Shown piece after piece: positions 28,924 to 64,000 of a stretch of 64,000 nucleotides of DNA (positions are counted from its first letter, which is position 1; each line of letters opens with the position of its first letter). This DNA is from Chlorokybus atmophyticus (taxonomy: Eukaryota; Plantae; Mesostigma and Chlorokybus algae). Location: the NCBI GenBank assembly GCA_009103225.1, contig RHPI01001559.1, forward strand, positions 66,274 to 130,273, given 5' to 3'. Under the pieces are notes generated by a model. The model worked only from the letters and a program-made list of their open reading frames with translations. It searched no databases and had not been told where the DNA came from. Made by a program: the position numbers and the translations under genes.

Positions 28924-30129
28924 CTAACACTTCTTCGCAGGAGCCTTGCTGCGTGCAGGCTCGGGGTTCGCGGCCTCAGCATTCGCAACCTGCTTCTGCA
29001 TTATGTATATGTAGTGGTGTGTGTCAGCGTTAATGACGTCGTCGTTAACTGGCTCAATCTCGCTGGTATTTCTGGATGATGACGTTGATGAGGCGTCCGC
29101 GTAGTTGGGCTTCGGTATCACCATTGTTGTAACAGACCACTGATACTCTTCCAGTTCCAAATAAGACAGTCGGTCCTGAGGCGCGCCATATGACATGATA
29201 ATGTACACGCCCGAGTCCTTCAACACGCGGGCTATCTGCAGAATCCAAGGCATGGAAATATATTGGCTCGACATCATACCACAACAGTGATGTAACCTAA
29301 CACAACCACCGCGCACAGCACCTCTTTGCACATGGCGCCCACGTTGTCTAGCGCATCAGATCCGCAGACAATGGCATCCAGCGTGCCCTTATCAAAAACC
29401 AGATCAAACGTCTTGTCCGCAAATGTCATACGCCGGCAATCCATTGTCATGTATCTGCAGCACACTGCGCATGACTGAGAAACGGTTGATGGATGCATTT
29501 GCTCATGCAGTTAAGCCGTTGCCGCTTGCCGTACTTGATGTCTGGACGGGTTGTTTGACTTCGCCTGCTCATCAACTGCACAACTGGCTCGCTGTAGTCG
29601 ATATTGGTGATGTTTTGGTACCCATCATCGTACATCTGCATAGAACCAGGCATCAACACATCATACACAAAGGCATAGATTGCTGCTGATGAAAAGGTAA
29701 CACATCAGCCTTCCATCCTTCCTACATAATCAAGTTTACCTGCTCGCCAAGTTGGCTGTTGCCGCAGCCAACCTGCAAAATAGCACCGTCCTTCTTTGCA
29801 TACTGATCAAACAGCGGTCTAAGCGCATCGTAGCTGTTGTACCTGCACAACAACCGTAGTTTGCTGATGCGAGCTGCAGTTGCAAAAACCTGCAACAGGT
29901 CGCCAACCATGCATGTAAGCTTGCACATGAGTGCACGGATGTGCTGCCCCACACAAGCACACATGTGTATGCACATGCGCGCGTGGATGCATGCGCACAC
30001 TAGCGCACCTGCGCACACCTATATACGCATACATGCGCGCTTGTGCTTAAACACTTACCAGTCAAACAGCTGGTCCCCGCTCCCATAATACCTCTGATTC
30101 CAGAAGCCCTTATCACCATACTCCGGCAT
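28924..30129 (-). CDS. Class I SAM-dependent methyltransferase, EEF1AKMT4/METTL13-N-like; 5 exons
   Basis: MPEYGDKGFWNQRY, FDW|Y, ILQVGCGNS (motif I), ITNIDYSEPVV, MDCRRMTFADKTFDLVFDKGTLDAI, ARVLKDSGVYIIMSYGAP, HYIYIMQK. Confidence 0.88.
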
Positions 30130-44500: not shown

Positions 44501-45800
44501 TTGAGTATGCAGCTCAACCGGCCCAGGCTTACCTACCCCACCGTGCTTGGGCCCTTTTACAACCATCCCCTAAAGGAGCTCATTATCAAACGAGTACGTG
44601 AGCTCCTGCTTAACTTAAAGGTTTTCCACGAATCCTTGAAGGTCGTCAACGAATCCTACAAGACCAAAGAGACCCAACTGCACGATAACTAAAAAGATGG
44701 TCTGAAGCATGCTACGAACAATCTGCCCCCTCTTACGGTGGCCAATGCTTGCTGCTGGGTGATCACCCTTGTCACCCGCGCTACGCATTGACCGTACTAA
44801 CCAGCCGCTAGTTTTGGACAGTTGGTAAGATGCGCTGCATCATCTTCAGCTGGAGTTGGCCAATCAAATACTTCTAGCAAGAAACAACTCCTTGCACCTT
44901 CAACCACTACAGCGGATGGCTCTCATCGTGCCCCCCCCTCACGACGGCTGAGCAAGCCATGCATCAATGCTGGTTGACCGCTGCTGGTAGAGTGGAGACC
45001 TTACGAAATGCACGTGAAGCCGATGAGCATACGGCGCGGGCAGAACAGCGAGCACCAGAATTAGCCACACGGCGTCAAGACTTCAGGCGGCAGCTGCAAC
45101 AACGTGTCGACACCACTCCTTGATCTCTGCTGTGGCCGAACCCAGGAAGATGTGGAGCGCATGGCTCAACAACAAATATACTTGACGCTATTCAAGATGC
45201 CCCCATGCTGTCATTTAACCTGAATTTCCGGTTACCCAACGTGGAGCGCCGCAGTTTCAAGCACAACATTACCGAAAGAGTGCGTGCCTTGGCCCATCAG
45301 GTGCACCGCGTTTTTGATCAAGGCCTTGCCCCGACTGCTTGGCAACAATGGCTAGACTCATCAGCAACATTGGAGAGACATGACCGCGTCACTTATCATG
45401 TCCTCGACAGCTTGTGCATGCGGTCAGACAGCGCGTACGAACAACCCAACCGCCTAGCCATTCTGGCCACTAGGTGGTTGGTCGCCATGACCATGCAGTA
45501 TGTTAGACATCATCCGGAACCACTGCCCCCCGCGCGATTAGTATATGATTTCACTTTGTCTGACCTCGATTCTTACATCAAGAATGAGTTTCAAGACCAT
45601 GCCAGTGTGATGTCCTTGGAGTTGAGATACATGGAATTCAGGATGCTCCCCTTTGCCCCCGCAGCCATCCGCACACTTGAAGTGCCCACACCGGCAGGTG
45701 CCCTTGCCTTTCAAGCTCTATGGTGACGCACCTATTACTCTGCAAAAGCTGCAGCTGTACACCCAGCACACTGCACCACTGCAACGGGCGCGTGATGCTA
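41545..45800 (+). mobile_element. Decayed LTR-retroelement-like region: candidate LTR 41545-42368, gag remnant with CCHC knuckles, unknown ORF2; no pol seen
   Basis: TGTC...GACA termini followed by TGGCGG (PBS-like). CHKCGKEGHFIRVC plus a degenerate CNQSGMVGHLEVVC at 43570-43690. Intronless broken ORFs. Confidence 0.5.
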
Positions 45801-48399
45801 TTCATAGTAACAAAGTACGCAACTTGGGTAAAATAATACGTAGCAATACGCGTACAACAAGCACTTGTTAATAAAACGTCGAAAGTACGTGATTTTGTAC
45901 GGTATTGGGCTCCAATATGTCAGTTTCCGTAATTAACCATGGATAGAGCAGCAAACGGCCTTCAGTAACGTGCCGCGCGCGCGACCCGTTGCGCGGCGGG
46001 TAGTTTGTGGAAGCGCCGTGCGACCACCTCACATATCGGCATTGCAAGTATGAAGCATTTAAAAACCTGTTATGAGATTACGTAATAGTATGTTATGTAA
46101 AAGCATTACCGTTAGAAATGACTTTGATCACATCATATGATTAGTGAATCGAACACTGTATGTTTATGCATTGTGATGTACAATGAGTTGCCCATCACTT
46201 GTTAGCACACATATCGCATCATAAACATTGCTAATATTTATCAGCATTACACATGAACAAGATATGAAGTGTTGGTCGGCATATTCTGAAAAAAGTACAA
46301 AAAGATACGCGTATTTTGCATATCACGTATCAATACGTGTATTACGTATTTTGAAACTATGCTATTACTAATTAGAAATGCCACACCTCGTGGACCCTCA
46401 TTTACATGAGCGAATGCACTTGGTGCGCACTGTACTGCAACTCACCCGCATCAGCCAGCTGCAGGGGGGCATGCTCAGAGTGCATCACACTATGGACATG
46501 CCTCCAGAGCGCTTCACCGGGGAAACCCAATAAATACAGTGTATGGACGAAAACACGACCTCCACGTCAAGTTCACCCCGCCTACCATACAATGAACGCC
46601 AACCTCACCGCATGCCCACGAACCTGGTTGAAACGGCGCGCACTGCCAGGGTGGCATGCGCTTTTGGAACATGCAAAAAGGTAGATTTCAGAAACCCGCC
46701 ACGTTTTAAAAGGAAGACTTGCATGAGGCACTTGTGATAGCCAACAATGCAGCCTTGCTCCAGTGCATGCAAGAAATTACAATCCTCATAAAGCACATAT
46801 GCCAGAGTGTGCACTGCAGTGCACCCCAATCCGTTAACAACATCCGTTCATGGATGTTTTGGCAAGACGAGCACATCCGACGTAAATTGTACCTGTTGCG
46901 CACTCGTCAGCTACTGCTTGGCACATACGTCGAGCGCACCTTGCCTAAAATTACTCGGATGAGGCTGCTGCATAACACCCTCCGCGTCCGCGCTGGGGGG
47001 GGGGGGGNNNNNNNNNNNNNNNNNNNNNNNNNNNNNNNNNNNNNNNNNNNNNNNNNNNNNNNNNNNNNNNNNNNNNNNNNNNNNNNNNNNNNNNNNNNNN
47101 NNNNNNNNNNNNNNNNNNNNNNNNNNNNNNNNNNNNNNNNNNNNNNNNNNNNNNNNNNNNNNNNNNNNNNNNNNNNNNNNNNNNNNNNNNNNNNNNNNNN
47201 NNNNNNNNNNNNNNNNNNNNNNNNNNNNNNNNNNNNNNNNNNNNNNNNNNNNNNNNNNNNNNNNNNNNNNNNNNNNNNNNNNNNNNNNNNNNNNNNNNNN
47301 NGGGGGGGGGGGGGGGGGGGATGGAGATGCGGTTGCTCCGCATAGAACGCGTCATGTCATTAGATTTATTATATGATCCTCAGCCTCGCCCATACCGCAG
47401 CACCCTCTTGCGTACAGTGTTGAATAACCTTACCCCTCTCTCGCAAGAAGTTGGCTTTTGGGGGGATGCCTGCCCCAAGGCATGGCCCAGCTGCGTCAGC
47501 AAATCATCCGTCATGAAAACCCATGGATTGACCTCGTGGCTCTTTGGCGCGACAATCCTTAGGGGGAACTTCTGCGCCTCATCATCTGGCTCACCAAGGA
47601 GGATTACTTTATGGACAACACTCTCAACCCCGACCTCTTTGTCAGCCCGGTCGTTTGGTTAAAGGACTTCGTCAGCATGCGCTCTCGCTTTCTCAGTTGG
47701 GTAGTTGATTATTCGATGCAGCTTCCTCCTTGCATGCACGAGAGCCGCCGCACAGGGGCCACTACCGACATGCTAGCAAATCACTTCGATCTTCCGCATT
47801 GGGAAGATAATAGCAATGCTGAGTTGCTCGAACGCACTGCCATCAAAAAGACGACTCCAAAGCGCGCGAGCTACGCCAGCAAGTAGTGCGTCAGCTAAGA
47901 GAGGGCACCGGTGCCTCTAAATCAGTGCTTCAAACCCACCCGGTCTCCATTCAAAGCCGAGCGTAAGTTGGTGGCAACTTACGTAAGCTTGTTACCCACT
48001 CTTCATGTGGCTTCCTACGGGAATTGACAAGGCCACCATTGAGAGCAAGCCATCACCGCCAAAGCCTTGCGCTTGGCCATGCAGGCATCCGCCACTTATG
48101 TGCCCCACCAGCTGATCCAGGTGAGCCAGGCATGTCACCTGCACCCGCAGGTGACTTGCTTGGCTCACCTGCGGATTCGCCGGCTGATCCACCCTCTTTC
48201 ACTCCCTCTACCAGCGGCTTTAACATCCCTTCACCCTCATTCTCAATAGTAGTGGAGGGTGAAGAGCCGGAAGAGGAAGACGCAACCGAGGAAGAGAGCA
48301 AGAAGGACGCCTCCTCACCCGAAGAAGGAGGTGAACCATGGGCTGCACTCGTCGTGCTCATTAAGCATCAGCCGCCAGCACGGCTTTGCACATCATTTT

Positions 48400-48860
48400 C
48401 ATCCCGTCAGTATTGAACCTTTGCGAGCCACCTCACACCTTGGTTTTGGCTCCGCTTCCGCCCAAATATCAGCACGGTCAACAACCTTCTGGGCCATGTC
48501 ACTTTTGCACACCACCGCTGGTCCCCTCGCCACGTGTTGTGTGACACCGGCGCCCATCCAATCATCGTAAGTAGACGAGCTGCAGAACGCCTCGGCATTG
48601 GTCTCAATGAACTGGATGAATCTTTTGACGAGATTCGCACCGCCCAAGGCGGTCTTAAGACCACTAGGGGAGAGACACGCCAGCGCATACCGTTGCGCTT
48701 CACTGGTTACAAGCTAGAAGAGACCACCGTTCTGAGTGTCTTTTGCCTCATCTCTGACTCACAGATATTCGACATACTCATTGGCATGGAGGCCTTGTTT
48801 CCTATCAGCGCGGCAATCGACACATGGACAGAGCACGCACTCTCGCGACTACGCTGGCAT
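48400..48860 (+). pseudogene. Retroviral-type aspartic protease remnant of the same Ty3 family as the DNMT elements
   Basis: VNNLLGHVTF..PRHVLCDTGAHPII...DILIGMEALFP..IDTWTE aligns with VDNRSGHVSL..VVLVDTGAQPVI...DVLLGQEFLFP..VDNWIE of the minus-strand element. Confidence 0.8.
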
Positions 48861-49075
48861 CAGAGCAATTGTCGTGCCTTCACTCCTCGTTGTTTAAACT
48901 CGTCGTACAACCTCCTTGCCATGCATGTCAGCATGCTATTGTACACCATGAGACACTGTTGTGCTGTCTCAAATCACCACTCATCTCACGAGGTAGACAC
49001 ATACACATGAAAGATGCGTGTCACCACCCCCTGCAGCTGAGCGCCAACGTCCTCGTGCGCCTGCAGGCTACTCGT

Positions 49076-49210
49076 ATATGCCGGACAATACCATGCCCCA
49101 TCAGGAATCTCATCCAGTGGCGGGTGGAGGCACTCCATATGCCAACCGGCAACACACCTGTCGCACAGCAGCATGGTGTCCCAGCTGTCTGCTCGACTAC
49201 ACCGCTCACA
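49076..49210 (-). other. PHD finger at the integrase C-terminus (copy 1; last Cys changed to Tyr)
   Basis: CERCSRADSWDTMLLCDRCVAGWHMECLHPPLDEIPDGAWYCPAY. Confidence 0.92.
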
Positions 49211-52200
49211 ACGGTGATCCACACCTGGAATTGCCGTCGACGGATCCACGTGGTCATCCACGTTGGGCAAATGACAAGGAGCGCAGCTCTTCATGTGCTC
49301 CTTGGTAGTGCGGGCATCAGCTCCCTCCAGCAACAACACTCCGTTGCTGAGGACCTTCTTTACACGCTGAATAGTACGACTCGCACTCGTGACCAATGTG
49401 TCCTTGGTCTTCCTCTGCAGATAGATGAAGTCTCCAGGCTGAAACTCCTGTAGTCTTGGCTTGTGTAAGCCACTCCTCACCCTGGCATAGCGCAGCGTGT
49501 CGCGGTGTTGTGCCACTTGCAGGTTGCCAAGTGCCATTAGCATTACACGCCGAAATAGCTCTGCACGCTTTGCTATCTCTCTCTCCCACACATTGGGATC
49601 CTCCAAGTCAAGCTCCTGCTCAACCTGCCGCCTGATTGATGTTGGCAGTATGGGCTCTCTCCCATACAACAAGAAGTAGGGGCTGTATGAGCTCAGCGCA
49701 GCTTGTCGCGTCATGCGGTAGCCCATCACCAGCCACGGCAACGCCAAGTCCCAGTCTCTCTTGTTGTGAGTGAGACAGTACTTGTGAAGCCCCTTCTTCA
49801 CCACCTGTACCATTTTCTCCGCAAGCCCATCAGCTTGGGGATGATCCCGGGAAGTCCTGCGATGATCAATGAAGACTTGCGCCAACAAGTCATTGAACTG
49901 GCCACGAAACTCAATGCCTTGGTCAGTGAGAACCTCGGCACAGGCTCCGAATCTGCTCAGCGCTTGGTCAAGGAAAGTCTCAGCAACTAGCTTGCTCTCC
50001 TTCGACGGCAACGCCACCTACTCGACCCATTTTGAGAAGTGCTCAATCATCACGAGCACGTAGCGGTTGCCTCTTTTGCTGACTGGTAGGTCTCCGGCCA
50101 GAGCTCCATCGATAGAATAGTCCCTGTATTGGCGGAGGGTGCAGCTGTGGGTGCTTGGCATTGAAGCTCGCCTTCACCCTGTCGCACTCCACACAACTCG
50201 CGACCACTCCCGCCACGGTAGTCTGCATGCCAGCCCACCAATATGCTGATTGCACAAGCCCAAGTGTCCTCTTGACACCAAAGTGGCCCATCTTCTCATG
50301 AAGCAGCTCCACAAGCGGCTTCCTCTCATGTGGTTGAGGCACAATCCTTACACCTCCATCAGGCATCAAGCGCACAAGGTGGTCTCTTTCCCACCGAAAA
50401 TTTGCGCACGTTGCCACACACGATCACGTGTCGCCGTGCTGCACCCAGCTTGAAACAGCCCGGTCTTTAGGTAAGCAAGCACTTGCTCATCACCCCATAC
50501 ATCCTTTGAAGCCTCGGCTTCCTCCCCATCAACGTTGTCGACCGTCGGGGCTGGTGCAGATGCCAAAGCCATCATAACACCATCACCATGGCGCTCATCT
50601 GCTGCGTTTTGGCGCGTGGTTGCGCACACGCCCGCGGAACCCGCCAACACAAGCAATGACGCCATACGGAAGGCCAAAAACCCAGCCACGGGCATGGCAT
50701 ATTCATGCCGTGCCTCACTCTCGTCCACAGACGATGGGTTTGGGTTCCTACTCAGCCCATCCGCGTCCATGTTGTCAACACCAGCTCGTTGTTCAATGCT
50801 GAACTCATACTCTTGCAGTATGAGCGCCCATCTGGCATGCTTCCCTGTGAGCTTATCGTTGCACATCAACCACTTCAAAGGCTGATGGTTGGTGATCAGC
50901 GTGAAGGGACGGCCATACAAGAACAGTCTGAAGTGAACAATGGCCCACACCGCCGCCAAACACTCCCCCTCATAGGAACTGTAGTTGGCCTCAGCGTTGT
51001 TGCTTCGGCTGCCATACGCCACCAAATACTCCTTGCCATTGTCATCCTTCTGACACAACACGGCCCATATGCCCAGGCGGCTCCAGTCTGTGTGTAGGAT
51101 GAAAGGACGGTTGTAGTCTGCCCGTCTCAGCACTGGCGCAGTACACAGCTTCTCCTTAAGAAGCTCAAAGGCGCGTTGACACTCTTCCGACCAGCACCAC
51201 GCCTTCTCCTTCCTCAACAACTCATTCAAGGGCTTTGCAATCTTGCTGTACCCCTCCACGAATCGCCGATAGTAGTTCGCCGAGCTGAGAAATGTGCGTA
51301 GTCGATTGATGTCCGTCGGCGCAGGCACTTGCAGTAAGGAATCCACCTTTGCTTGCTGCACGCAGACGTCGTATTGCACTATCTCATGCCCCAGGTACGG
51401 GATGCAATCAGCCCCGAACAAGCACTTTTTCGGGTGGCACCTCATGCCGGCCTCGCGCACGCGCTCGAACACGCGCTCCAAGTGCACAAGATGCTCCCCC
51501 ATTGTGTGGCTAAACACCAAGATGTCATCGATGTAACATCTTGCAAAGGGTAGCCCACGAAGCACGCGATCCATCACGCGCTGAAACTTCACTGGTGCGT
51601 TCTTCAAGCCGAACGGCATGACCTTCCATTGGTAGAGCTGATCTACTCCCCAAAATGCTGTCTTGCCACGGTCCTCAGGCTTGATGGTGATCTGGTTGAA
51701 GCCTTGCCTCAAGTCCACAATTGAGAACACCTTTGAATTGCCGATGTCATCGAGGATTGCCTCCGGGATAGGCATGGGGTAGCGATCAGCCTTGGTCTTC
51801 TCATTCAATGGCCGATAGTCACCACACATCCTCCTTGAGGTCCAGTTTCCCTGCGCATCCTTCTTCAATGGCAGCACTGTCGCAACCGCTAAGTATGAAG
51901 TCGACTGTGCAATCAGTCCGGCCTTTCACAAGTCAGCACACTTGTCCAACACGAACTCCTTCTCCACCTTACTCAGCCGATATTGCCGACGAAAGATGGG
52001 CTCAGGAGAGGTCAACTCAATGTCCATCGTGTAGAAGTTGCAGACTCCCAACTGCTTGATAGAGTAGGCGAAGCAGTTGCGCTTGCGCGCCAATAATGCT
52101 TCAAGCCGCTCACGGTGCTCTGGTGTCACACACTCGCCCATACACCACTCCATGATCTGGTTGGTAGCCTTCTCAAGCTTCAAGGCACCATCTATAGCCG

Positions 52201-52342
52201 CTTTCTTGCCACTTGCAGCTGTCACAGGCGAAAAAGACACCCCTTTACTCTCACCATCATGTACACCATGCTCCCACCCCCTCGATCGAGGCGCAGGCGC
52301 CTGACGTGCTTGCTGTCGCACGGGCATGAAGCCTAATGCCAA

Positions 52343-53310
52343 CTATTGTGCTGCCAAGCAGACAACCATCAGCCACACCATGCTGTTCTGGTCCATGGCT
52401 TGCCCTAGCAGCACTCGGCGTCGTTGTTCACTTAGTCCTGGCGCCGCCGTCGCACCGGACAAGAACCCCATCGCTCGCTCGCGCTCATCAGTTGTTGGCT
52501 CTTCCAACCTGCTGTGTCGTGAGTCCCACACCAGCCCTGGCCCTCCGTTGCGGAATGCATAAGAGCCTGGGTAGGTCACTAGCGTCGGCAACGCTGCCAT
52601 GTCGTGCCCGACCTGGTTCACCACCTCTTGAGGCGGCCGATCAGCCTTGCTGACCTGTTGTGCTGTGTGCCCATGCTCCAGCACCTGGTTGACTGTCAAA
52701 CCTTGCGGTCTTTTATACTCTTGCTGCACCGTGCGAAGTAACTTGATAGGCGCGAGGTTTGTCCACTTCACACGCAGCCGATGCGCAAACCATGCCGTGC
52801 CGCATCCATGACCAGCTCATGGCCTAGAACATGTCTCACCAGCTAATAGTCCTCTTTCACGCGCTTGCGCTTATCGTCTTCAGCCGGCACATTCTCCATG
52901 ATGTACGCCATGGGCTGCTCTTGTCTTTGCTGAATCATGTTGATAACACGCACCAACTCCCAAAACAATGATGAGCGCGCATCCATCAATCCCTTCCCAT
53001 GACCAGCCCGTAAATGCCCTTGGCATTCCCACCCCGCTACTAGCAAATCAACCGTGCCGATTGCCGCGAGATAATGTGGCCCCCTCCAAGCAAATGTTTT
53101 GAGGCCATGCATTTTGGAAGCCCTTCACCGCACTCTCACATAGCAGGTCCGGGTACTTCGTCAACAAAACCCTCACATGATGTTGAGCACCTTGTTGTGC
53201 CGTTGGCGAAGGGTCCACATAGACGTAACGCCGCACCTTGATGCCGGCGTTGAACGCAGCCGCAAGCCCACTTGCAATGCCACCGAACAGCTCTACCATC
53301 ACAACACCGT
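52343..53310 (-). pseudogene. Retrotransposon-encoded C5-cytosine DNA methyltransferase domain (copy 1)
   Basis: Motif I VELFGG (53279-53293), II YVYVD, IV DLLVAGWECQGH (53020-53037), VI YIMENV (52888-52896), VIII AHRLRVKWTN, IX EPTTDERERAMGF, X LLGQAM. Two frameshifts and one internal stop. Confidence 0.9.
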
Positions 53311-56300
53311 CCTCGGGGACCTTCCACTCAAAGGTGTTGTAGTTGATGGGCGGATGTACAGCTCGCACACCCTTGGGCAGCAACGGAGGCGCCAATGGCA
53401 TCACATCTCGTGTCCACGCATGGCCAACCTTCTCATAAGCTTGTTGATGCCGCTGAGCACGGTGTTGTGCAGCTATCTCCAGCTCTTGTTGCTGAGCTTG
53501 AGCCGCTTGTAGCAGCTCCAGAGGTCTCTCCTCTTCCATGTGGTTGAAGACAACGTCTCCCTTCTCCACATGGTCATGGTACAAGTCGACGCTGTCACCA
53601 AGCCACCCCATAGCTGGTCGCCAACTCGAGCACGCCCACAATGCAGATGCTGAGGTTGGAGCCCTCTCGACAGCCCCTTGCGTGATGCTTAACGGAAAGT
53701 AGGCCTTCTCTCCCCCTCCCGTGCGCCAACGCGGCCGAAAGAACCCTTGCTCGATCCAATTATCAACGCCGTCACCGCTGGGGAACAAGAACTCTTGTCC
53801 GAGCAGCACATCATACCCTCTTGCATCCGTGATGAGGCATCGAACCTTGAATGATGTGGTAGCACCTCCCATTGCAGTCACACGGATCTCCACCGGCTGC
53901 ACGGTGATGCCACGCACCGTCTCAACGGTCCCCGCCGAGGTCTTAATCATGAACGGGCATGTCTCCCACTCCTTGGAGGTAAGTCCTAGGCCTGCCACAG
54001 CTCTGGAACCTAAGATGACAGGTTGTGCGCCTGTATCTACCAAGACAACATCTGGTACAAAGCCGTCCAGGCTGACGTGACCACTCCGGTTGTCTACCAT
54101 AGCCACATTGGGCGAAATCCTCTCTCTCAAGGCCGGCCGAGTGGCGGGAAGCTGTGCCAACATCCCTCCTGCACGCCCCATACCTTCCTCCAGCTTGTCT
54201 CCAAGCTGAGTGAGAGAACTTGACTCTGACGCGTGCCCTCCCGACGCCGCCAGCATTGCCCGCGCAGCCATACGGCCTACTTGCGCCATCATATCTCCTT
54301 GAGACTTGCTTATCTGGTCATGAGACTTTGTGGAGGCACTCTTCATGGTGTCTAGAGCGCTTTGCAACAGCCCTACCACCTGCTCCTTGGTGACTCCAAG
54401 GTCCTCCAAGCGAAGAAGAGGCTGCCCGACCAGCACCGCCGCGACACCCTCCAACGGCGCCGTCAACTCCGAGTTTCCCTCATGGACTTGGGTTGGGGGC
54501 TGTTGGTAAAGCATCTTAGACTCCTGTAGAAGTTTTACACAAACTTGGAGCAGCTCCTCCACTCTCTTGTGCTCACCACCGCTACCGACGCCGACCTCAC
54601 GGCGCGCCGTTGCCGTAGCAGTCGGCTGCACCTTCGCACCTTCCGGACGCGAACTCTCTTGCTCCAACGGGGTTGTTGGCAGCAACTCAAATGACTTTGG
54701 CATGCGGGCAGGTGGTTCACGCATCCTATCATGATCCACACCCTCCTCGTGGACGAGTGCGGCCTCCTCCTCGACCATCCTAGTCAGGGGAGCTGGTGCA
54801 GCCCCGCCGCGCGCCGACGCTCTCGTTGTAGCCGCCGCTGACACCTCCGTGCCTCCGTGGAGCGCACCAAACGCAAGGTAGCTTCCGGAGCTGCTAGGCA
54901 CATCCCTCCCTCCGCTCTCGGGCCACTTCCCTCGCTCGAGCATGCTCTTCAACGATGCATACTCAGATTGCATAGCCGCTAGGGCTCTTGTCACCTCTAA
55001 CATTGAAGGCTCTTCCTTCACACCCGAGTGAGCACCGGTTGCACCTCCTCGTGCTTGTGGACGCAGCTCTGGGTGCTTACTCCAACACTTGGCCTCGACG
55101 TGCCCTCCCTTCTTGCAATGAGAACACACGTCCTTCTTGCCACCCTTCCCACAATTCTTTGCGATGTGACCTTGCTCGCTGCACGACCAGCATTTAGTAC
55201 CCGACACACCTTCCACACTCGCGTTGTTGGCGTGCTTGAGCTGCCCGGACGTGCCACCAGCTGCCTTGCTCGCTGCCACGGGCTTGGAAGAGCTCATCTC
55301 CTCCGACGCTTCAAGCAACTTCAACCCACGACGCTGCCGGTCGATGTTCTTGAGGTACTCATGCTGAATCTCGGCCGTCTCGGCCACCTTGAACACATCC
55401 GCAAGCGTGTACGTACCAAACTCTGACTGAGTGGTCAACATGGTCTCCACCTTCAGCCTCAAGTCCCCCTCAAGTTGTTGAAGGTACACCACCGCCGCGG
55501 TCTGATCCGTCATCACCTTGTAGTCCGTGTCCGTCAAGAGCATACGCTTGTACATCATCCTCGTCATCTCACCGATGTGGTGCTTGATGTAGCTCAGCTC
55601 GCGAACCTTGGCAGGGGTTGATTGTGGGTAAGTCTTCCTCAGAAGCGCCTTGAACTCAGTCACGGGCTGCTCCTTCTTCCACTCCGCCTCAAACTCAGCC
55701 GGTGCACCCACGCGCAACGCCCTCTCTCGCATCTCCAGCTGCTCCTGGAATTCTCTCCACGTGCTCAAGGCTTCATCCTTAAGGTATAGAGGCAGCATCT
55801 TGAAGGCCTTGTGCTCGTCCCACCCCGACTTGTCGCGGTACTCCCATTTGACCATCTCGAAGACGAAGCGGTCGATGAAGTCGCGTAGGTCTGCCGTGCC
55901 GGGCCTCCCACGATGTGCTATCCATGGCTGAAGCTGAGTCAAACATCACCCCACCCTCGTCTTCGAAGTCGGACTCCTCGTCACTCGAAAACTTCACCTC
56001 TTTAGCGACGCCCTCCACCACCGGAGTGATCGCTCTTCTCGGCGCTTTTCTCTTCGAAGCCGCCTTCGTGGGTCTCTCGTGCCAGTCCTCACCAGACCGT
56101 AGGGGCATGAACACGCCTGCTCCTCACTTCAACTGGAGCAAATTCAGATGATGGGTTGAATGCAAGTGAAAGATGCGTGTCTCCTTGCAAAAGAAAGGCA
56201 AGATGACCCCAACTTGACTTGCAATCAGCCGTTTGCTCATGAAACTCAGTCCTCACCCATGCTAAGGCAGCTCATACAGTGCATCAAGGTCGCAACAATG

Positions 56301-56442
56301 ATGCACACTCATTCATGCAAGGCAACCAAGCAAGGCACACGCGCGCACACACGCAAGCATGCACACACGCATGCACTCAGCCAAGAACCTCTTCCCGAAG
56401 GCTTTGCTTGCACTCCAGTGAGCCAACTTGCATTCAACCAAC

Positions 56443-57034
56443 TGTAACACAAGCTAGCTAAGGCTTACATACCACCGTTGAGTCCATGCCCAACCAACGC
56501 CTAACCAACTCTTCAACTTCTAATGACTTACAGGCTGCATCAGCTACATAACAGTCATTATGAGGCCAATAAGTGGTAGTAAATGGATAGCAATGGCTCC
56601 CCAAAGCTTATCCTCTTCAAGACGCATCTTTTGCGTCCATCCCCACGCCAAACCACCACTCCAACTGTCAGTTACATCTGTGACAAGTCATGACTCCAAA
56701 ACAGCTGCGCGGGATACCATACTAACTCGATTACGCCGAGAACTCTGTATCTGGCTATGGATACGCCTCGAATATGCCTCCCACTCGTAAAGGACGACCC
56801 AAACTCGAGTCCCAAGTGAAAACCCAACATAAAGAGCCTCTATGATGGCTCAGGGCTCCAAAGTCATAGGGCCCATGTATGCTGCCAGCCCCGAGGGCAC
56901 CATGCACATGACACTATATGCTCGCGCATGACACAATGGAACCCTCGCAGCTATTGCCCTACGCCTATGCACCTCTTCGCATTACCCTCTTACAGCCATT
57001 CCTACCAAACGCGCCAATGCCGCATTGCGTTACA
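56443..57034 (-). repeat. Candidate 5' LTR (592 bp) of the minus-strand element; no partner LTR found
   Basis: Termini TGTAAC...GTTACA form a perfect 6-bp IR. On the minus strand it is followed by GT and TGGTTGAATGCAAG (PBS position), 335 bp upstream of gag. Confidence 0.55.
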
Positions 57035-57599
57035 CCTTGCACCTGCCTGAGGGGGATCAAGTCGAACCTTAGGCGCTACGCACAGCTACTCGCAAGTGCT
57101 AAGTTAGAGCTGAGCTGTGGGGGGAGGGAGGGGAATGGCTTCATTTGTGCAGCCTTGACAGCAAGCCTGTGCTAAGCATTTATTCAAATATCTGCGTAGA
57201 CTGCATTAACTTCAACCATACTTCAAGTTTAGCTTGAGCGTATACATTGCAGTCGAAATTGATTCATTACTAGCTTGGGGGGTTAAGGTTATTTATTCAT
57301 AGAGAGCTAGCATGGCATCCTTGCACTCGTCCACAAAGGGACTTGCGCAAACCAAACTGGCAGAGGTTGCTACTGCCATTGCTACACAAAGCAACTCACG
57401 CTCTAGGTGCGTGGTAAAACATCAATTCCACCAACTGAGGCTCCTCGTGGAGTAGCCAATCAAGACTCGTCACATCGCCGTCGGCTTGCTCAGGCCATGG
57501 CGGCCCACGTGGCACCCGCACCGGTTTCCTCGCCTGATGTGCCTGGTGATCCTCTTCGTCAGCTGGACCTTTCTACTGCGCATCAAACACCACAACGCC

Positions 57600-58560
57600 G
57601 CCGCAACGGCCTCACTATTTGGAGCTGGTTAGAGGAGTTGAAAACGGCTTGGCGTCATTGCTCGGCGTAGGCCCCAGTCAGCAAATACTTCTATTGTGAC
57701 CCACATCCGCAAGCACAAACAGCAGGGGCACAACACTTGCTTCAGATGCGCAAACGGTTCCCCTGACTAGAGCCATATGCAACTGCAGCCTGCGTGCCCT
57801 GCCTTAGGACATCCGCCTCATCACGGGTGAACACTTACTAGCACTAAAAGGTGTGGACATTGTTATCGCAGGATGGGAATGTCAAGGGCATTCACGAGCT
57901 GGCAAAGGACTCGGCCTACAGGACGCACGCTCCAAGCTGTTTCGGGGGTTAGTACGCATCATATGTACACTTCAGCAACAGCAACCTGACAGGCACCCGG
58001 CATACATTCTTGAGAAAATGTGTGCTCAAGATAACCGGCGTATCAAAGTACGCAAAGATCACGAACAAAATTGCACCGTGCTCGGCACATCTATTGTGAT
58101 CGATGCTGCGGCTCACGGCTCTCGTGCACATCGGTTGCACAGCAAGTAGACAAACCTTGCTAATGTGGAAGATTTAGCAGCAGCACAACATCTGTTAGGT
58201 CTCCTGGCCTACTCGTGCAAGACATACTAGCTGCTGGAGCTACACCTCAACCAGTGCCCCGTCCGGACTACAAACACTTTCATTTATGCAACAAGGTGGG
58301 ACACTCGATGGCTGCCTTGCCAACATTTGTGGCCTACTCAAGCTCACATTCCTTTTTCAACAGCAACATTCATACGGTTTGAGATAGCAATCTCAATTGT
58401 CTTTGTGAACCTTTGGCTACTGAGCGCGAGCTGGCAATGGGTGGTTGGCCTGGTGCCATCACACATGCTGTCAAGCTGGCAGAGCGCAATTGCCGAGAGC
58501 TACTTGGTCGCGCCATGGACAACGTCAGCATGATTTGGTTGCTGAAGACATGCTTGGCCC
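57600..58560 (+). pseudogene. Retrotransposon-encoded C5-cytosine DNA methyltransferase domain (copy 2)
   Basis: Frameshifted ILELVRGVENGLASLL..YFYCDP, AGWECQGHSRAG..DARSKLF, YILEK, DAAAHGSRAHRL, EPLATERELAMG, LLGRAMD; collinear with copy 1. Confidence 0.85.
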
Positions 58561-58964
58561 ACCTACACAGCTATTGGCCACGCCAACCACCCCGGTCAAA
58601 TGCTGGGAGGGGGGGAGAACCTGCAGAATTCAGGGACCTATCATACCTCTCAACGGTCCTTCACGGCGAGCTTGAAGCACTTGAGAAAGCACTTAACATC
58701 CCTCATAGCTACGAACCTGAGCAAGACGGTTGGTGCGTTGGCTGTATGGTCTCCGGCAACGTCGAGGACAAGTTATTGTCCCTACTTGAAAAGCACAAGA
58801 CACAGTTTGCTCATTCACTCAGAGATCAAAGCAAGCGCACCTTTCATAAATTTATTATTGACTTGGACACACTTGGGCCCATCTTCCACAAGCAACACCT
58901 GTTGGCAAAGGTCAAGACGGAGCTTATCGAGACCAGTTGCAAGAAGCTGCTGGACGCATGACTT

Positions 58965-59442
58965 ATTGAGGAAGCAGCACTCAGCACACAGTATGCAGCC
59001 GCCACCGTCATGCCCTTGACGAAGGATGAGCAAGGATATTGGACGCAGCGGCGCATGTGCGGTGACTATTGCAACCTCAACAACACATAGTGCTGAATCG
59101 CTACCACATGCACACCCCTGACGAGATCTTCGACAGCATCGGCACTTGCAAGTACTTTTTGGTGTTGGACATATGCATGCGCTCCGGATTTTATCAGATG
59201 GAGGACAAGGCACTGATTGAGGAAGCAGCACCTAGCACATAGCATGCAGACGCCACCGTCATGCCCTTAAAAAAGGATGAGCAAGGACAGTGGACGCATG
59301 TGTGGCGACCATCGCAACCTCAACAACCACATAGTGCTGGAACGCTACCGCATGTATACCCCTGACGAGATCTTCGACAGCATAGTACATGCAAGTACTT
59401 TTTGATGTTGGACATATGCATGCGCTCCGGATTTCATTAGAT
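58965..59442 (+). repeat. About 250-bp tandem duplication inside the RT of element 2
   Basis: Two copies (58965-59199, 59216-59442), each beginning attgaggaagcagcac and containing cctgacgagatcttcgacagcat and ttggacatatgcatgcgctccggatt. Confidence 0.9.
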
Positions 59443-61790
59443 CGGCAGTAAGGCGGAGGACAAGTGCAAGACCGCTTCACAAGGCAACCGAACATAGTAT
59501 CAGTGGTAGGTTATGCCTTTTGGATTAAAGAATGCACCTGCATTCTTCCAACGCGTGATGAACAGAACTCTTCATGGGCTAGACAACTTTAGATGCTACA
59601 TTGATAACATTCTCACCTTCAGCCACACCGTTGAAGCGCGCCTGCAGCACATGAAAGAGGTGTTGCTTCGACTGAAAAAGCACGAGCTCACGGCACACGT
59701 TAAGAAGTGTACCTTATTGGCTGACAAGATTCCATACCTCGGCCACCTCATCGTCCCGTACGGAGTGATGGTGCAGCGTGCAAAAATGGATGCATTACAA
59801 AAGGTGCCACCACCCACGGACATCTCGCGTCTGCGTGCCTTCCTTGATCTTGCCAATCAATACCATCGGTTCGTGCTTAACTTCTCCAGGTTGGCCAGAA
59901 CCCCTCAATGACCCGCTGAGGAAAGCCCTCACTTGGCATTGGGGAAAAGCCGAGCCACAAGCCTTCAAGGCACTGAAGAGCCACCTACAGTCGGCTCCAA
60001 TCCTGGCGCGCCTTGACTACAGCAAGCCCTTCATAGTCCACATCGATTGGAGTTGGCTTGGGCTAGATGCTGTCCTCTGCCGAAAGAAAAAGTCATTGCG
60101 TCCGCCACTGTGAGCGATAACGCTGCTGGAAGTCAACTACAGCAGCTATGAAGGGGAGCAGCTTGCAGTTGTTTGGGCCATATAAATTTTTTGGCCATTG
60201 CTCTTCAGCTATCAGTTTAAGTTGGTCGCTGACCATCAGCCCCTGTTGTGGCTTCTCACTAGCTACAAACTTGCTGGCAAGCACGCGCATTGGGCATTGC
60301 TGCTGCAAGAATATGACTTCACTATTACTCACATGCTAGGCATTGTCGCCACTGATGGCTTGAGTCGCAACCCCAACCCGACATAGTGGGGATGCCACCG
60401 GCGCCCAATATGACGGCGACACGCCCCGCAAGCACGCCATGTTGGACATAGCAGCCGGCACACGCGCGGAGGTCCGCAACCCAGTGCTCAGGGCCACCAT
60501 ACCCCCTGCAAGAGAAGGAGACATTTGAACAGATGAGCTTACTTTGCAGCTGATTAAGACAGGAGCCATGCTTGCTGGGCTGGATTACAAGGCAACCGAT
60601 TGCGCGCGGCACCGCGCCAAGAACTACACATGAGACGACGATGTCCTTTGGCGCATTATGAACGATGGCCAGCGCAAGGAGGTTCCCCCACCCAACCGTC
60701 AGGTGTCCATTATCGCCAAGTTGGCATGAAGCGCATTGCCAACATGGTGCGTGGAGACTTTTGGTGGGACGGACAGTTTCGCAACGTTGCGGAGGTATTG
60801 AAACATTGTAAGTCCTGAAATCGCATTCGGGCAAGCTTTTTACATCGTCACCCTCAACTGCATCCCTTGCCCATCATGGGGCTTGGTAGCGCTGGAGCAT
60901 GGACCTTGCAGGCAGGAGCTGCCCATCACACGTCGCGGCAACGTATACATACTTGTTGCCATTGAACACTTCAGCAAGTGGGTTGAGCTGATACCTCTAC
61001 CAGACAAGACACCATCCACAATGACGCGGGCGTACTTGGAGCACATTCTCTGCAGATTCGGCGCCTGCGCAGAGCTGCTTACTGACAACGGCACCGAGCT
61101 TTAAGGGGAATTGAACACTTTGCTCTACTGCTCACTCATTGATCATCGCCGCACCATCGGTGATCATCCGCAGGCTGATGGCCCGGCAGAGAGGATGGTG
61201 CAGACAATGAAGAAAGCTTTCTGTTGCTACTGTGTAACCCACCGGCAGGAAGAGTGGGACAACTTTTGGCCTTGGCTCGCGCTACGAAACCGCTGCACGA
61301 GGCAAACTGCCTTGCGTTCCTTTTGCCCATACTTCCTCATGTTTGGGAGGGAACCTCTGCTACCATTTCACATTCGTCACGCAACGCAAGCAGTGGAGGA
61401 TCCCATTAACAAACCCACTCACATGAGCGAGGTGTGAACAGCTCGCGCCACCGCACTCAAAGCCTCTGTGCCCATGGCGTTTGCCAACTCCAAGATTGCG
61501 CACCAACTGGACAAGCGGCGCTACGAACACGTGCGTAGCATGGGGGGCTACATTACACGGATACGCAAGTTCTACATTGGCGACTACGTCCACCGCAAGA
61601 AGTAGACCACCAACACCTAAAACCCTGCCAATTACGGCATTGTGTACAAGGTGGTACAAGTACGCGCACAGGGCACCCTGTCGCTGCGAGATCCCTCCGA
61701 TAAAACGGAAGTTGACCATGTACACAACAGCTTCCCTTGGCATCTGCCATATGTTGACGACCTCGACAAGCCTCGCCACGAGCTCGAAAC

Positions 61791-61955
61791 ATGACATGCA
61801 CCGGCTGCGCCTCAGACCGTCACCCTTTGCTGGAATGTGACATTTGCTGGAAATGCTGGCATGAGACTTGCAATCTTGGCGTCACCCTTGTTGCCACCGA
61901 TCCCAATGGGGCGTCTTCCTCTGCCAGCCAACTGTGGCGCTGTCACAGGTGCTAA
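61791..61955 (+). other. PHD finger (copy 2), intact C4HC3
   Basis: MTCTGCASDRHPLLECDICWKCWHETCNLGVTLVATDPNGASSSASQLWRCHRC*; translated by hand, below the ORF-track length cut-off. Confidence 0.8.

Positions 61956-62657: not shown

Positions 62658-64000
<1,343 letters not shown>

What the first reader, a model, noticed from the sequence alone, without database searches (positions are those of the whole stretch)
48986..57034. Retrotransposon polyprotein carrying both a chromatin writer (C5-DNMT) and a reader (PHD)
Seen: one Ty3/gypsy element has a full DNMT fold (motifs I, II, IV, VI, VIII, IX, X) between protease and RT, plus a PHD finger after the integrase where chromoviruses carry a chromodomain. 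Known: DNMT capture by retrotransposons has been reported in Symbiodinium and in charophyte Ty3/gypsy (de Mendoza et al. 2018, from memory), so the DNMT alone is not unprecedented. Inference: protease processing would release a DNMT that could methylate the element's own cDNA, and a PHD-integrase that chooses target chromatin. That would be a self-contained epigenetic module, and I do not recall this exact architecture being characterised.
Basis: partly seen in the sequence, partly recalled or inferred. Interest (0 to 1): 0.9.

Follow-up and report, generated by a model that had tools for sequence, protein, structure and literature searches.

The report
Dead copy of known Gypsy-DNMT3 retrotransposon
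The window holds a broken, nested copy of an already described kind of green-lineage retrotransposon that carries a Dnmt3-type DNA methyltransferase, and its PHD finger after the integrase is a normal, conserved feature of that large family rather than a one-off.

Summary
On the minus strand (about 48986-56106, plus a 5' leader) lies Gag(2xCCHC)-protease-C5-DNMT-RT-RNaseH-integrase-PHD. This copy is dead: at least 5 frameshifts, 3 in-frame stops (two frameshifts and one stop inside the DNMT), and the last zinc ligand of the PHD changed to Tyr. It has no detectable terminal repeats and sits inside a second, diverged element of the same layout on the plus strand.

The layout is not a chance fusion. 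An intact 2358-aa relative (P0293) and about 24 complete metagenome loci have the same order. The DNMT is Dnmt3-type by profile and by fold. Relatives carry DIRS-like split direct repeats, the oddity reported for KnitGypsy-Dnmt3 of Klebsormidium nitens (de Mendoza 2018).

Integrase-PHD fusions occur in Klebsormidium, liverworts, mosses and chlorophytes. PHD fingers in Gypsy elements are already published. I found no text that states the DNMT+PHD pairing explicitly.

The PHD resembles readers of unmodified H3K4, so targeted integration is a reasonable inference. DNMT activity is unproven: the K. nitens domain was inactive in yeast, an inconclusive result.

Verdict: a new, degenerate member of a known kind, of low to moderate interest. 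The host organism was not identified; nothing suggests human.

The parts
56107..57330 (-). Element 1: 5' non-coding leader. The upstream limit is uncertain, somewhere between about 57030 and 57400.
   Evidence: No ORF and no similarity to the leaders of relatives. Coding remnants of element 2 resume by 57407-57630. No LTR or split repeat was found.
54200..56106 (-). Element 1: Gag, with two CCHC zinc knuckles (55151-55192 and 55085-55126). A probable frameshift lies near 55940 (ATG at about 56106 in another frame).
   Evidence: CCHC patterns read directly. Weak collinear match to the Gag of P0293 (23%). ORF frames.
53786..54049 (-). Element 1: aspartic protease (D-T-G at 54029-54037).
   Evidence: Pfam PF13975 2.6e-7 and PF13650 4.6e-6. 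Coordinates.
52346..53338 (-). Element 1: Dnmt3-type C5 DNA methyltransferase domain, broken. Frameshifts at about 53072 and about 52789; in-frame TAG at 52843-52845; TAG at 52343-52345 at its end. Motif IV reads GWECQG.
   Evidence: Pfam PF00145 1.8e-9 on the middle piece. Three-frame reading. 47-58% identity to the DNMT of L002/L004. Family profile against PDB: DNMT3A 7e-23. Model of the relative against PDB: all top 50 hits are DNMT3.
51929..52342 (-). Element 1: spacer between DNMT and RT, ended by an in-frame TGA at 51926-51928 that falls in the conserved start of RT.
   Evidence: 31-34% identity to the same stretch of L002/L004.
50807..51844 (-). Element 1: reverse transcriptase (51380-51844, YIDD at 51524-51535) and RNase H (50807-51193).
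   Evidence: Pfam RVT_1 5.4e-30, RT_RNaseH 6.9e-32. Coordinates.
49250..50333 (-). Element 1: integrase. H2C2 zinc finger (50169-50333, in a shifted frame), then DDE core and C-terminal part (49250-50017). Frameshifts lie near 50366-50417 and near 50017-50060.
   Evidence: Pfam Integrase_H2C2 4e-16, rve partial. 52-59% identity to integrase-PHD proteins of K. nitens, Calypogeia and others.
49076..49210 (-). Element 1: PHD finger at the integrase C-terminus. The last zinc ligand is Cys->Tyr (TAT at 49076-49078). The ORF stops at 48986-48988.
   Evidence: Pfam PF00628 6.8e-9. Family alignment. PDB: CHD4, PHF12, ATXR5, WSTF, KDM5, BAZ2, PHF21A, AIRE.
48438..48887 (+). Element 2 (the host of the nested insertion): protease remnant, left half of the split element.
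   Evidence: tblastn 36% to element 1's protease. Pfam PF13975 1.8e-7.
57630..58559 (+). Element 2: Dnmt3-type DNMT remnant with frameshifts. Motif IV is also GWECQG; motif VI is degenerate.
   Evidence: tblastn 47-54% to element 1's DNMT pieces. Pfam PF00145 2e-5..
59007..61761 (+). Element 2: RT (with a 250-nt internal tandem duplication at 58961-59442), RNase H and integrase remnants.
   Evidence: tblastn. Pfam RVT_1 2.3e-15, rve 8e-8. Repeat.
61758..61952 (+). Element 2: PHD-like C4HC3 remnant in the position homologous to element 1's PHD, with a long insert.
   Evidence: Cys/His pattern read directly and aligned with the family. No Pfam hit at E<0.01, so this part is tentative.

Best explanation
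Window 48986 to about 57300 (minus strand) is a pseudogenised copy of a Ty3/gypsy-type retrotransposon of the streptophyte 'Gypsy-DNMT3' kind. Its layout is Gag-PR-Dnmt3-like DNMT-RT-RNaseH-IN-PHD. It inserted into the protease-DNMT spacer of an older, diverged element of the same layout lying on the plus strand.

Shown:
- the domain content and order;
- the lesions;
- the nesting pattern;
- that the layout, including the PHD, is the norm in a large family found in charophytes, liverworts and mosses, with a sister clade in chlorophytes that has the DNMT between RNase H and integrase;
- that the DNMT is Dnmt3-type by sequence profile and by fold;
- that intact relatives carry split direct repeats (A1...B1-A2-B2).

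Inferred for functional family members only, not for this copy:
- The C-terminal PHD tethers the integrase to nucleosomes whose H3 tail is unmethylated at K4, steering insertions away from active promoters. This would be the same job a chromodomain does in chromoviruses.
- The Dnmt3-like domain, made as part of Pol, methylates the new cDNA or the insertion neighbourhood.

In this locus neither activity can exist.
For: - Domains and order.
- Lesions.
- Nesting: element 2's protease at 48438-48887 (+) and its DNMT-RT-IN-PHD-like run from about 57630 to 61952 (+) flank element 1. They are collinear and on the same strand, and the gap fits the missing spacer.
- Family-wide layout: P0293, a single 2358-aa ORF with the same order; L002; about 24 complete metagenome loci reading PR-DNMT-RT-RH-IN-PHD.
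- Named hosts: K. nitens, Calypogeia, Marchantia, Sphagnum, Closterium and Coleochaete (a transcript), plus Chromochloris and Monoraphidium for the sister clade.
- Dnmt3 type: PDB profile search gives DNMT3A/B/C at 7e-23 to 1e-20, DRM at 1e-12, M.HhaI at 1e-9 and no DNMT1. The AlphaFold model has pLDDT 83.8, and the 50 best Foldseek hits are all DNMT3, TM 0.83.
- Split direct repeats: 34 of 68 loci have B1/B2, and 8 of them also show A1/A2. This matches the legend of Fig. 4c for KnitGypsy-Dnmt3.
- Trees: the DNMT and integrase trees both place window element 1 in the streptophyte clade A.
- PHD: dN/dS 0.20. Its nearest solved relatives are mostly readers of unmodified H3K4. It has a hydrophobic residue before Cys3, Gly rather than Trp two residues before the His, and usually an acidic residue before Cys1, which are the criteria given in PMC3241642.
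Against: - No terminal repeats, PBS or target-site duplication could be found for either window element, so the ends and the nesting are inferred from coding collinearity only.
- No relative closer than 59% identity was found, and the host organism is unknown. Membership of the published K. nitens family rests on shared architecture, Dnmt3 type, repeat structure in relatives, and one K. nitens integrase-PHD protein at 52-61% identity. It does not rest on comparison with a published KnitGypsy-Dnmt3 sequence.
- DNMT activity is unproven. The K. nitens domain gave no methylation in yeast. More than half of the clade, both window copies included, has Glu in place of the near-universal Pro of the catalytic Pro-Cys.
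- PHD specificity is inferred from sequence only.
- dN/dS for the DNMT in the fetched loci was underpowered: 3-6 pairs, values 0.38-0.57.
Confidence: 0.85

Rival explanations
1. One reading: a working, self-contained epigenetic module at this locus. Protease would release a DNMT that methylates the element's cDNA, and a PHD-integrase would choose target chromatin.
For: All the needed domains are present in the right order. Catalytic motifs I, IV (Cys), VI and VIII are recognisable.
Against: - At least 5 frameshifts and 3 in-frame stops in conserved positions.
- The DNMT is split into three frame segments.
- A PHD zinc ligand is lost.
- There are no terminal repeats, and the 3' end is cut within 100 nt of the stop.
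Confidence: 0.03
2. Chance chimera: fragments of a host DNMT3 gene and a host PHD gene happen to lie inside or beside an ordinary Gypsy element, or the arrangement is an assembly artefact.
For: The window is a gapped draft scaffold with six N runs. Liverwort annotations list fragments of such sequences as separate 'genes'.
Against: - The same order, in one continuous ORF, is found in P0293, and the same order holds in about 24 independent loci.
- The second window element repeats it.
- The DNMT and integrase trees agree on the same two clades.
Confidence: 0.02
3. In this family the Dnmt3-like domain is not a DNA 5mC writer. It could be catalytically weak or inactive, used for binding DNA or cDNA or for multimerisation, or it could act on RNA. 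'Chromatin writer' would then be the wrong label even for intact members.
For: - The K. nitens retrotransposon DNMT gave no methylation in yeast.
- The Pro of the catalytic Pro-Cys is Glu in 60 of about 110 clade members, including the intact P0293.
- Motif X is degenerate.
- The domain carries no PWWP or ADD.
Against: - The catalytic Cys, the motif VI Glu (EN[VTA]), the motif I glycines and the motif VIII Arg residues are kept across sequences only 37-63% identical.
- The fold model superposes on the DNMT3A catalytic domain.
- The published Ka/Ks is below 0.2 in K. nitens.
- Human DNMT3B was also silent in the same yeast assay.
Confidence: 0.3
4. The PHD does not steer integration to H3K4-unmethylated chromatin. 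It may read another mark, bind a host protein, or serve after integration, for example by recruiting the element's own DNMT or host silencing or anti-silencing factors.
For: - No binding or insertion-site data exist.
- ORC1b (an H3K4me3 reader, from memory) and UHRF1 (an H3R2 reader) are also among the PDB hits.
- One DNMT-bearing subclade (P0152, P0161, Closterium) does without a PHD.
Against: - The position at the integrase C-terminus is the same as the chromoviral chromodomain.
- The best single-domain PDB matches (ATXR5, CHD4, PHF12, KDM5 PHD1, BAZ2, PHF21A, AIRE) and the sequence criteria of PMC3241642 point to unmodified H3K4.
- Intergenic insertion bias is reported for a PHD-bearing Chlamydomonas Gypsy element.
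Confidence: 0.3

Closest known systems
KnitGypsy-Dnmt3 / 'Gypsy-DNMT3' of streptophytes (de Mendoza et al. 2018, Nat Commun 9:1341, PMC5890265)
   Same: - A Dnmt3-type, non-rearranged DNMT lies inside the Pol of a Gypsy-type element.
- Motif X is poorly conserved.
- Relatives of the window element carry DIRS-like split direct repeats, as the paper states for this family.
- A K. nitens integrase-PHD protein is the top-scoring hit to the window's integrase-PHD.
   Different: - The paper's text, legends and supplement never mention a PHD; the figure itself could not be seen.
- The window copy is only 50-60% identical to anything found.
- It is degenerate and shows no terminal repeats.
- Its host is unidentified.
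Chromoviruses (Ty3/gypsy with a chromodomain at the integrase C-terminus)
   Same: A histone-tail reader is fused to the C-terminus of a Gypsy integrase. The presumed role is in choosing insertion sites.
   Different: No chromodomain was found in any piece. The family has split direct repeats instead of LTRs.
PHD-bearing Gypsy elements of Chlamydomonas (Gypsy-7a_cRei; REM1, Perez-Alegre 2005), as cited in Craig et al. 2022/2023
   Same: A Gypsy polyprotein with a PHD finger, proposed to limit harmful insertions.
   Different: There the PHD lies between RNase H and integrase, and no DNMT is reported. Here it follows the integrase and travels with a DNMT.
EpiLTRs (bioRxiv 10.64898/2026.05.21.726589)
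   Same: LTR-type retrotransposons that combine a DNA methyltransferase with a chromatin reader domain. The same idea of an 'epigenetic toolkit' in one element.
   Different: EpiLTRs carry a prokaryote-like adenine methyltransferase, a DNMT4-related DNMT and a chromodomain. The window family has a Dnmt3-type DNMT and a PHD, with no adenine methyltransferase.
SymbioDIRS-Dnmt3 (Symbiodinium)
   Same: A Dnmt3-type DNMT in Pol, in an element with DIRS-type repeats. De novo CG methylation was shown for it in yeast.
   Different: It is a DIRS element with a tyrosine recombinase. The window family has a DDE integrase and Gypsy domain order. The capture was independent according to the paper.

Membership tests
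Ty3/gypsy (Metaviridae-type) retrotransposon | Pol order PR-RT-RNaseH-IN, with Gypsy-type RT/RNaseH and an H2C2+DDE integrase | tested here: met
   Pfam RVT_1, RT_RNaseH, Integrase_H2C2, rve and gag-asp_proteas, in that order on the minus strand.
Ty3/gypsy (Metaviridae-type) retrotransposon | Long terminal direct repeats flanking the internal region | tested here: not met
   No LTRs in the window. Intact relatives have split direct repeats A1...B1-A2-B2 instead.
Gypsy-DNMT3 (KnitGypsy-Dnmt3) | C5-DNMT of Dnmt3 type, motifs in normal order, embedded in the Pol ORF | tested here: met
   Motif order I-IV-VI-VIII-IX-X. Family profile: DNMT3A 7e-23 against DRM 1e-12 and bacterial 1e-9. Fold search: all top 50 hits are DNMT3.
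Gypsy-DNMT3 (KnitGypsy-Dnmt3) | Repeat structure like a DIRS element, with Gypsy domain content | tested here: inconclusive
   Met in relatives (34 of 68 loci with B1/B2, 8 with A1/A2). Not detectable in either window element.
Gypsy-DNMT3 (KnitGypsy-Dnmt3) | Clusters with published K. nitens copies in RT and DNMT trees | not testable with these tools
   No published KnitGypsy-Dnmt3 sequence could be fetched. The only K. nitens sequence obtained is the integrase-PHD protein KFL_015960010 (52-61% identity; it falls in the same integrase clade A).
Chromovirus | Chromodomain at the integrase C-terminus | tested here: not met
   Pfam finds a PHD, not Chromo, after the integrase.
DIRS retrotransposons | Tyrosine recombinase instead of a DDE integrase | tested here: not met
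   Integrase_H2C2 and rve are present. No phage-integrase hit.
EpiLTR | Adenine methyltransferase (DAM) plus DNMT plus chromodomain | tested here: not met
   No adenine methyltransferase or chromodomain in any piece. The DNMT is Dnmt3-type, not DNMT4-like.
PHD finger, unmodified-H3K4 reader class | C4HC3 zinc ligands | tested here: inconclusive
   All 8 ligands in relatives; 7 of 8 in window element 1 (Cys->Tyr). Pfam PF00628 6.8e-9.
PHD finger, unmodified-H3K4 reader class | No aromatic-cage Trp; a hydrophobic residue before Cys3; acidic residues before Cys1 (criteria of PMC3241642) | tested here: met
   The family pattern reads xMLLCDxCxxG[WY]H, with Leu before Cys3, Gly two residues before the His, and Asp or Glu 2-4 residues before Cys1 in most members. 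Nearest PDB domains are CHD4, PHF12, ATXR5, KDM5 PHD1, BAZ2, PHF21A and AIRE.
PHD finger, unmodified-H3K4 reader class | Binds the H3 tail only when K4 is unmethylated | not testable with these tools
   Needs peptide-binding assays.

The most novel reading that the evidence does not exclude
Across green plants and algae there may be one old clade of Gypsy-type elements with split direct repeats, in which a Dnmt3-derived methyltransferase and an unmodified-H3K4-type PHD on the integrase are inherited together. It occurs in two alternative domain orders: PR-DNMT-RT in streptophytes and RH-DNMT-IN in chlorophytes. The Pro of the catalytic Pro-Cys switches repeatedly with Glu.

If the PHD guides both the integrase and the element's own DNMT, this would be a transposon-borne copy of the ADD-plus-methyltransferase logic of cellular DNMT3. 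The pairing has not been described as such in the literature I could search.
Probability: 0.25. Interest if true: 0.6.

Novelty: new member of a known kind. Interest (0 to 1): 0.3.

Why it matters
For this locus, little: it is a decayed, nested transposon copy of a published kind.

For the family, the survey adds four modest points that a transposon or DNA-methylation specialist could use:
- The DNMT-bearing Gypsy lineage first described in Klebsormidium is widespread. It occurs in liverworts, mosses, Coleochaete and Closterium, with a sister lineage in chlorophytes.
- It normally carries a conserved PHD finger on the integrase.
- It keeps DIRS-like split repeats despite having a DDE integrase.
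- Its catalytic loop tolerates Glu in place of the canonical Pro.

These points make the questions 'does a transposon write its own methylation?' and 'does it read H3K4 state to choose its landing site?' testable with natural intact copies.

Tried and rejected
- **Terminal repeats, LTRs, PBS.** Tried exact-seed repeats, self-blastn down to word 7, comparison of the leader with the 3' end, and comparison with the leaders of L002 and L004. Nothing convincing came up. A TGGTATC... PBS-like string at 56719 and a 25-nt repeat (49001-49025 / 56160-56184) are not interpretable.
- **tRNA genes in the window.** None.
- **Close relatives.** The single-sequence scan of JGI metagenomes found none. Only the alignment-based scan worked. 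The best identity anywhere is 59%.
- **Host organism.** Not identified. No protein hit exceeds 59%. DNA similarity to the one K. nitens contig fetched is about 65% and confined to coding sequence.
- **dN/dS of DNMT, RT and integrase in the metagenome loci.** Too few stop-free copies for a firm number. Only the PHD gave a robust estimate.
- **CpG depletion as a trace of past methylation.** The elements (0.73-0.78) do not differ from the rest of the window (0.76).
- **Coupling between Glu at motif IV and loss of the motif VI Glu.** Rejected: the motif VI Glu is kept in all members.
- **Pfam on element 2's PHD-like stretch.** No hit, so that part is called tentative.
- **Consensus.** Natural intact relatives served instead. 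The broken DNMT was read through only with X at the breaks, inside scripts, for alignment and trees.


Full report
**What is there.** The feature lies on the minus strand. Pfam scans of the separate ORF pieces give, from 5' to 3':
- a Gag region with two CCHC knuckles (55151-55192 and 55085-55126);
- an aspartic protease (53786-54049; D-T-G at 54029-54037);
- a C5 DNA methyltransferase (PF00145, 1.8e-9, on the 89-aa piece 52843-53112);
- reverse transcriptase (51380-51844, YIDD) and RNase H (50807-51193);
- an integrase H2C2 finger (50169-50333) and integrase core;
- a PHD finger (PF00628, 6.8e-9; 49082-49210).

Reading all three frames shows the DNMT motifs in the normal order: I (ELFGGIASG), IV (GWECQG), VI (ENV), VIII (AHRLRVKWTNL), IX (ERERAMGF) and a degenerate X (LLGQAMD).

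**State of this copy.** It is a pseudogene.
- The main frame is left and regained twice: across DNMT motifs IV-VI (about 53072 to about 52789), and across the integrase zinc finger (about 50417 to about 50043). There is probably one more shift at the start of Gag, near 55940.
- There are three in-frame stops in conserved stretches: TAG 52843-52845 inside the DNMT, TAG 52343-52345 at its end, and TGA 51926-51928 at the start of RT.
- The eighth zinc ligand of the PHD is Tyr (TAT 49076-49078), where every relative has Cys.
- The indels could in principle be assembly errors, since the window is a gapped draft with six N runs. The stops and the Cys-to-Tyr change are substitutions.

**Surroundings.** tblastn of the element's own pieces, and of intact relatives, against the window finds a second, diverged element on the plus strand, 36-54% identical at the protein level:
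- a protease at 48438-48887;
- after an interruption of about 8.4-8.8 kb that is occupied by the first element, a DNMT (about 57630-58559);
- RT and RNase H (59007-60383, with a 250-nt internal tandem duplication);
- integrase (60723-61761);
- a C4HC3 PHD-like remnant (61758-61952; no Pfam hit).

The missing protease-DNMT spacer of element 2 is about what lies between 48887 and element 1's stop, plus about 57330-57630. The simplest reading is that element 1 inserted into element 2.

Element 1 has about 1.2 kb of leader 5' of Gag but fewer than 100 nt after its stop codon. No LTR, split repeat, PBS or target-site duplication could be found for either element.

**Is the layout a family trait?** Yes.
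- The exhaustive HMMER search with the 964-aa Gag-PR-DNMT piece and two word-index searches found no close relative; the maximum is 59% identity. They did find many distant ones.
- P0293 is a single 2358-aa ORF, collinear with the window element from Gag to PHD. L002 has the same order in three adjacent ORFs.
- A profile-guided scan of JGI metagenome contigs returned 80 loci. In every locus with enough upstream sequence the order is PR-DNMT-RT-RH-IN-PHD: about 24 are complete and a few have internal deletions.
- Among 115 DNMT-bearing database proteins, 47 have a second order, RT-RH-DNMT-IN-PHD. About 10 have the window's order; of those, a subclade lacks the PHD. One protein has Copia order.
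- The DNMT tree and the integrase tree both split into the same two starred clades. Clade A (window element 1, K. nitens, Calypogeia, Marchantia, Closterium, L002, L004) has the DNMT before RT. Clade B (Monoraphidium, Chromochloris and many metagenome proteins) has it before the integrase.
- Named hosts are Klebsormidium nitens, Calypogeia fissa, Marchantia polymorpha, two Sphagnum species, Closterium, a Coleochaete scutata transcript, Chromochloris and Monoraphidium.
- The PHD is under purifying selection among the fetched copies: median dN/dS 0.20 over 628 pairs, similar to the integrase core at 0.22.

**What kind of DNMT.**
- A profile of 16 family DNMT domains hits DNMT3A/3B/3C in the PDB at 7e-23 to 1e-20. 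DRM scores 1e-12, bacterial M.HhaI/HaeIII 1e-9 and DNMT2 1e-6, with no DNMT1 or CMT hit.
- An AlphaFold model of the domain from the intact relative L002 (pLDDT 83.8, pTM 0.82) finds only DNMT3 catalytic domains among its 50 best Foldseek matches, with target-normalised TM 0.83-0.84.
- The catalytic Cys, the motif VI Glu, the motif I glycines and the motif VIII arginines are invariant or nearly so.
- There is one oddity. The Pro of the catalytic Pro-Cys is Glu in 60, Pro in 48 and Asp in 1 of about 110 members, with at least 7 switches on the tree. Both window elements and the intact P0293 have Glu.

**Comparison with what is known.**
- de Mendoza et al. 2018 (PMC5890265) describe KnitGypsy-Dnmt3 in K. 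nitens. [quoted passage not shown]
- I tested that last, unusual trait in the relatives. In 34 of 68 loci a direct repeat of about 178 nt (B1/B2) starts about 95-100 nt after the PHD, with a spacing of about 470-515 nt. In 8 loci the roughly 300-nt stretch between the two copies (A2) recurs upstream of Gag (A1). That is the split-direct-repeat arrangement A1...B1-A2-B2.
- Together with the Dnmt3 type and the K. nitens integrase-PHD hit, this places the window elements in the same kind of element. Later papers treat transposon-embedded DNMT3 in streptophytes as known.
- PHD fingers in retrotransposons, including Chlamydomonas Gypsy elements, are also published and have been proposed to guide insertion.
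- The word PHD does not occur in the 2018 paper's text, legends or supplement. I found no paper stating the DNMT+PHD pairing. The figure showing the domain architecture could not be read.
- The concept of a transposon carrying both methyltransferases and a chromatin reader is in a 2026 preprint on EpiLTRs, with different domains.

**How it most likely works (intact members only).**
- Shown: the domain content, the conservation and the fold.
- Inferred for the PHD: it sits where chromoviruses carry a chromodomain. Its nearest solved relatives are CHD4 PHD1/2, PHF12, ATXR5, WSTF, KDM5 PHD1, BAZ2A/B, PHF21A and AIRE. It has the features a review gives for readers of unmodified H3K4: no cage Trp, a hydrophobic residue before Cys3, and acidic residues before Cys1. 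The likely role is tethering the intasome to H3K4-unmethylated nucleosomes, away from active promoters.
- Inferred for the DNMT: it may methylate cDNA or the insertion neighbourhood, as proposed in 2018. The only experiment on a K. nitens domain was negative and inconclusive, and the Pro-to-Glu change leaves room for a different role.
- Whether the protease releases the DNMT is unknown.

**Other notes.**
- Nothing suggests a human origin. The transposon family is confined to green plants and algae in every named hit, and the neighbouring exons look like ordinary eukaryotic genes, read by eye only.
Broken genes were searched as separate pieces, and were read through with X at the breaks only inside scripts.

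**Verdict.** This is a degenerate, nested new member of a known kind, Gypsy-DNMT3. The PHD and the broad distribution are useful but modest additions. Interest is 0.3.

Noticed in passing
window 53020-53034 (-) and about 57870 (+); family proteins P0001-P0377: In this retrotransposon Dnmt3 clade the catalytic Pro-Cys dipeptide reads Glu-Cys in 60, Pro-Cys in 48 and Asp-Cys in 1 of about 110 domains. There are at least 7 Pro/Glu switches on the tree, while the motif VI Glu is always kept. The intact 2358-aa P0293 has Glu.
   Followed up: partly
L006, L033, L049, L059, L073, L079, L080, L084 (for example L033: 1479-1781, 11015-11193, 11194-11496, 11498-11675): Relatives with a DDE integrase and Gypsy domain order carry split direct repeats A1...B1-A2-B2 instead of LTRs. 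B1/B2 is seen in 34 of 68 loci.
   Followed up: yes
P0129, P0140, P0143, P0318 and about 45 others; P0106: The same DNMT clade sits in a second polyprotein order (RT-RH-DNMT-IN-PHD, including Monoraphidium MNEG_11595) and once in a Copia-order protein (rve-RVT_2-DNMT). This suggests the module has moved within or between elements.
   Followed up: partly
L004 1-18357: An ENA contig flagged circular holds 2.2 head-to-tail units (period 8261 nt) of an intact element, with only 1185 nt between successive polyprotein ORFs. Window element 1 including its leader is of similar length.
   Followed up: no
window 58961-59442 (+): A 250-nt tandem duplication (85% identity) inside the RT of element 2.
   Followed up: no
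window 49001-49025 and 56160-56184: A 25-nt direct repeat (21/25 identical, 15 of them an exact run) brackets the coding region of element 1. About 0.04 such repeats are expected by chance in this self-comparison. Its meaning is unknown.
   Followed up: partly
window 43552-43848 (+) and 44000-48400: A CCHC zinc-knuckle ORF (Pfam zf-CCHC 4e-5) may be the Gag of element 2. It lies 4.7 kb upstream of that element's protease, against 1.05 kb in element 1. An N gap (47008-47301) and possibly another insertion lie between.
   Followed up: no
window 23335-24783 (-), 62850-63146 (-), 1377-2045 (+), 28927-29355 (-): Host-gene exons, read by eye: a MAP kinase kinase-like kinase, a U2AF65-like UHM motif, an LPMO-like domain and a methyltransferase-like exon. 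None was tested and none identified the organism.
   Followed up: no
P0226, P0243, P0257, P0261, P0278, P0361-P0365, P0369, P0370 (Marchantia); P0165, P0166, P0360 (Calypogeia); L001: Liverwort genome annotations list fragments of these elements as ordinary genes ('PHD-type domain', DNA cytosine-5 methyltransferase). In L001 only the integrase-PHD part is present, with no RT or DNMT in the 10 kb upstream.
   Followed up: partly
P0004: A Coleochaete scutata transcriptome contig encodes PR plus DNMT of this family, so the family is transcribed in that alga.
   Followed up: no
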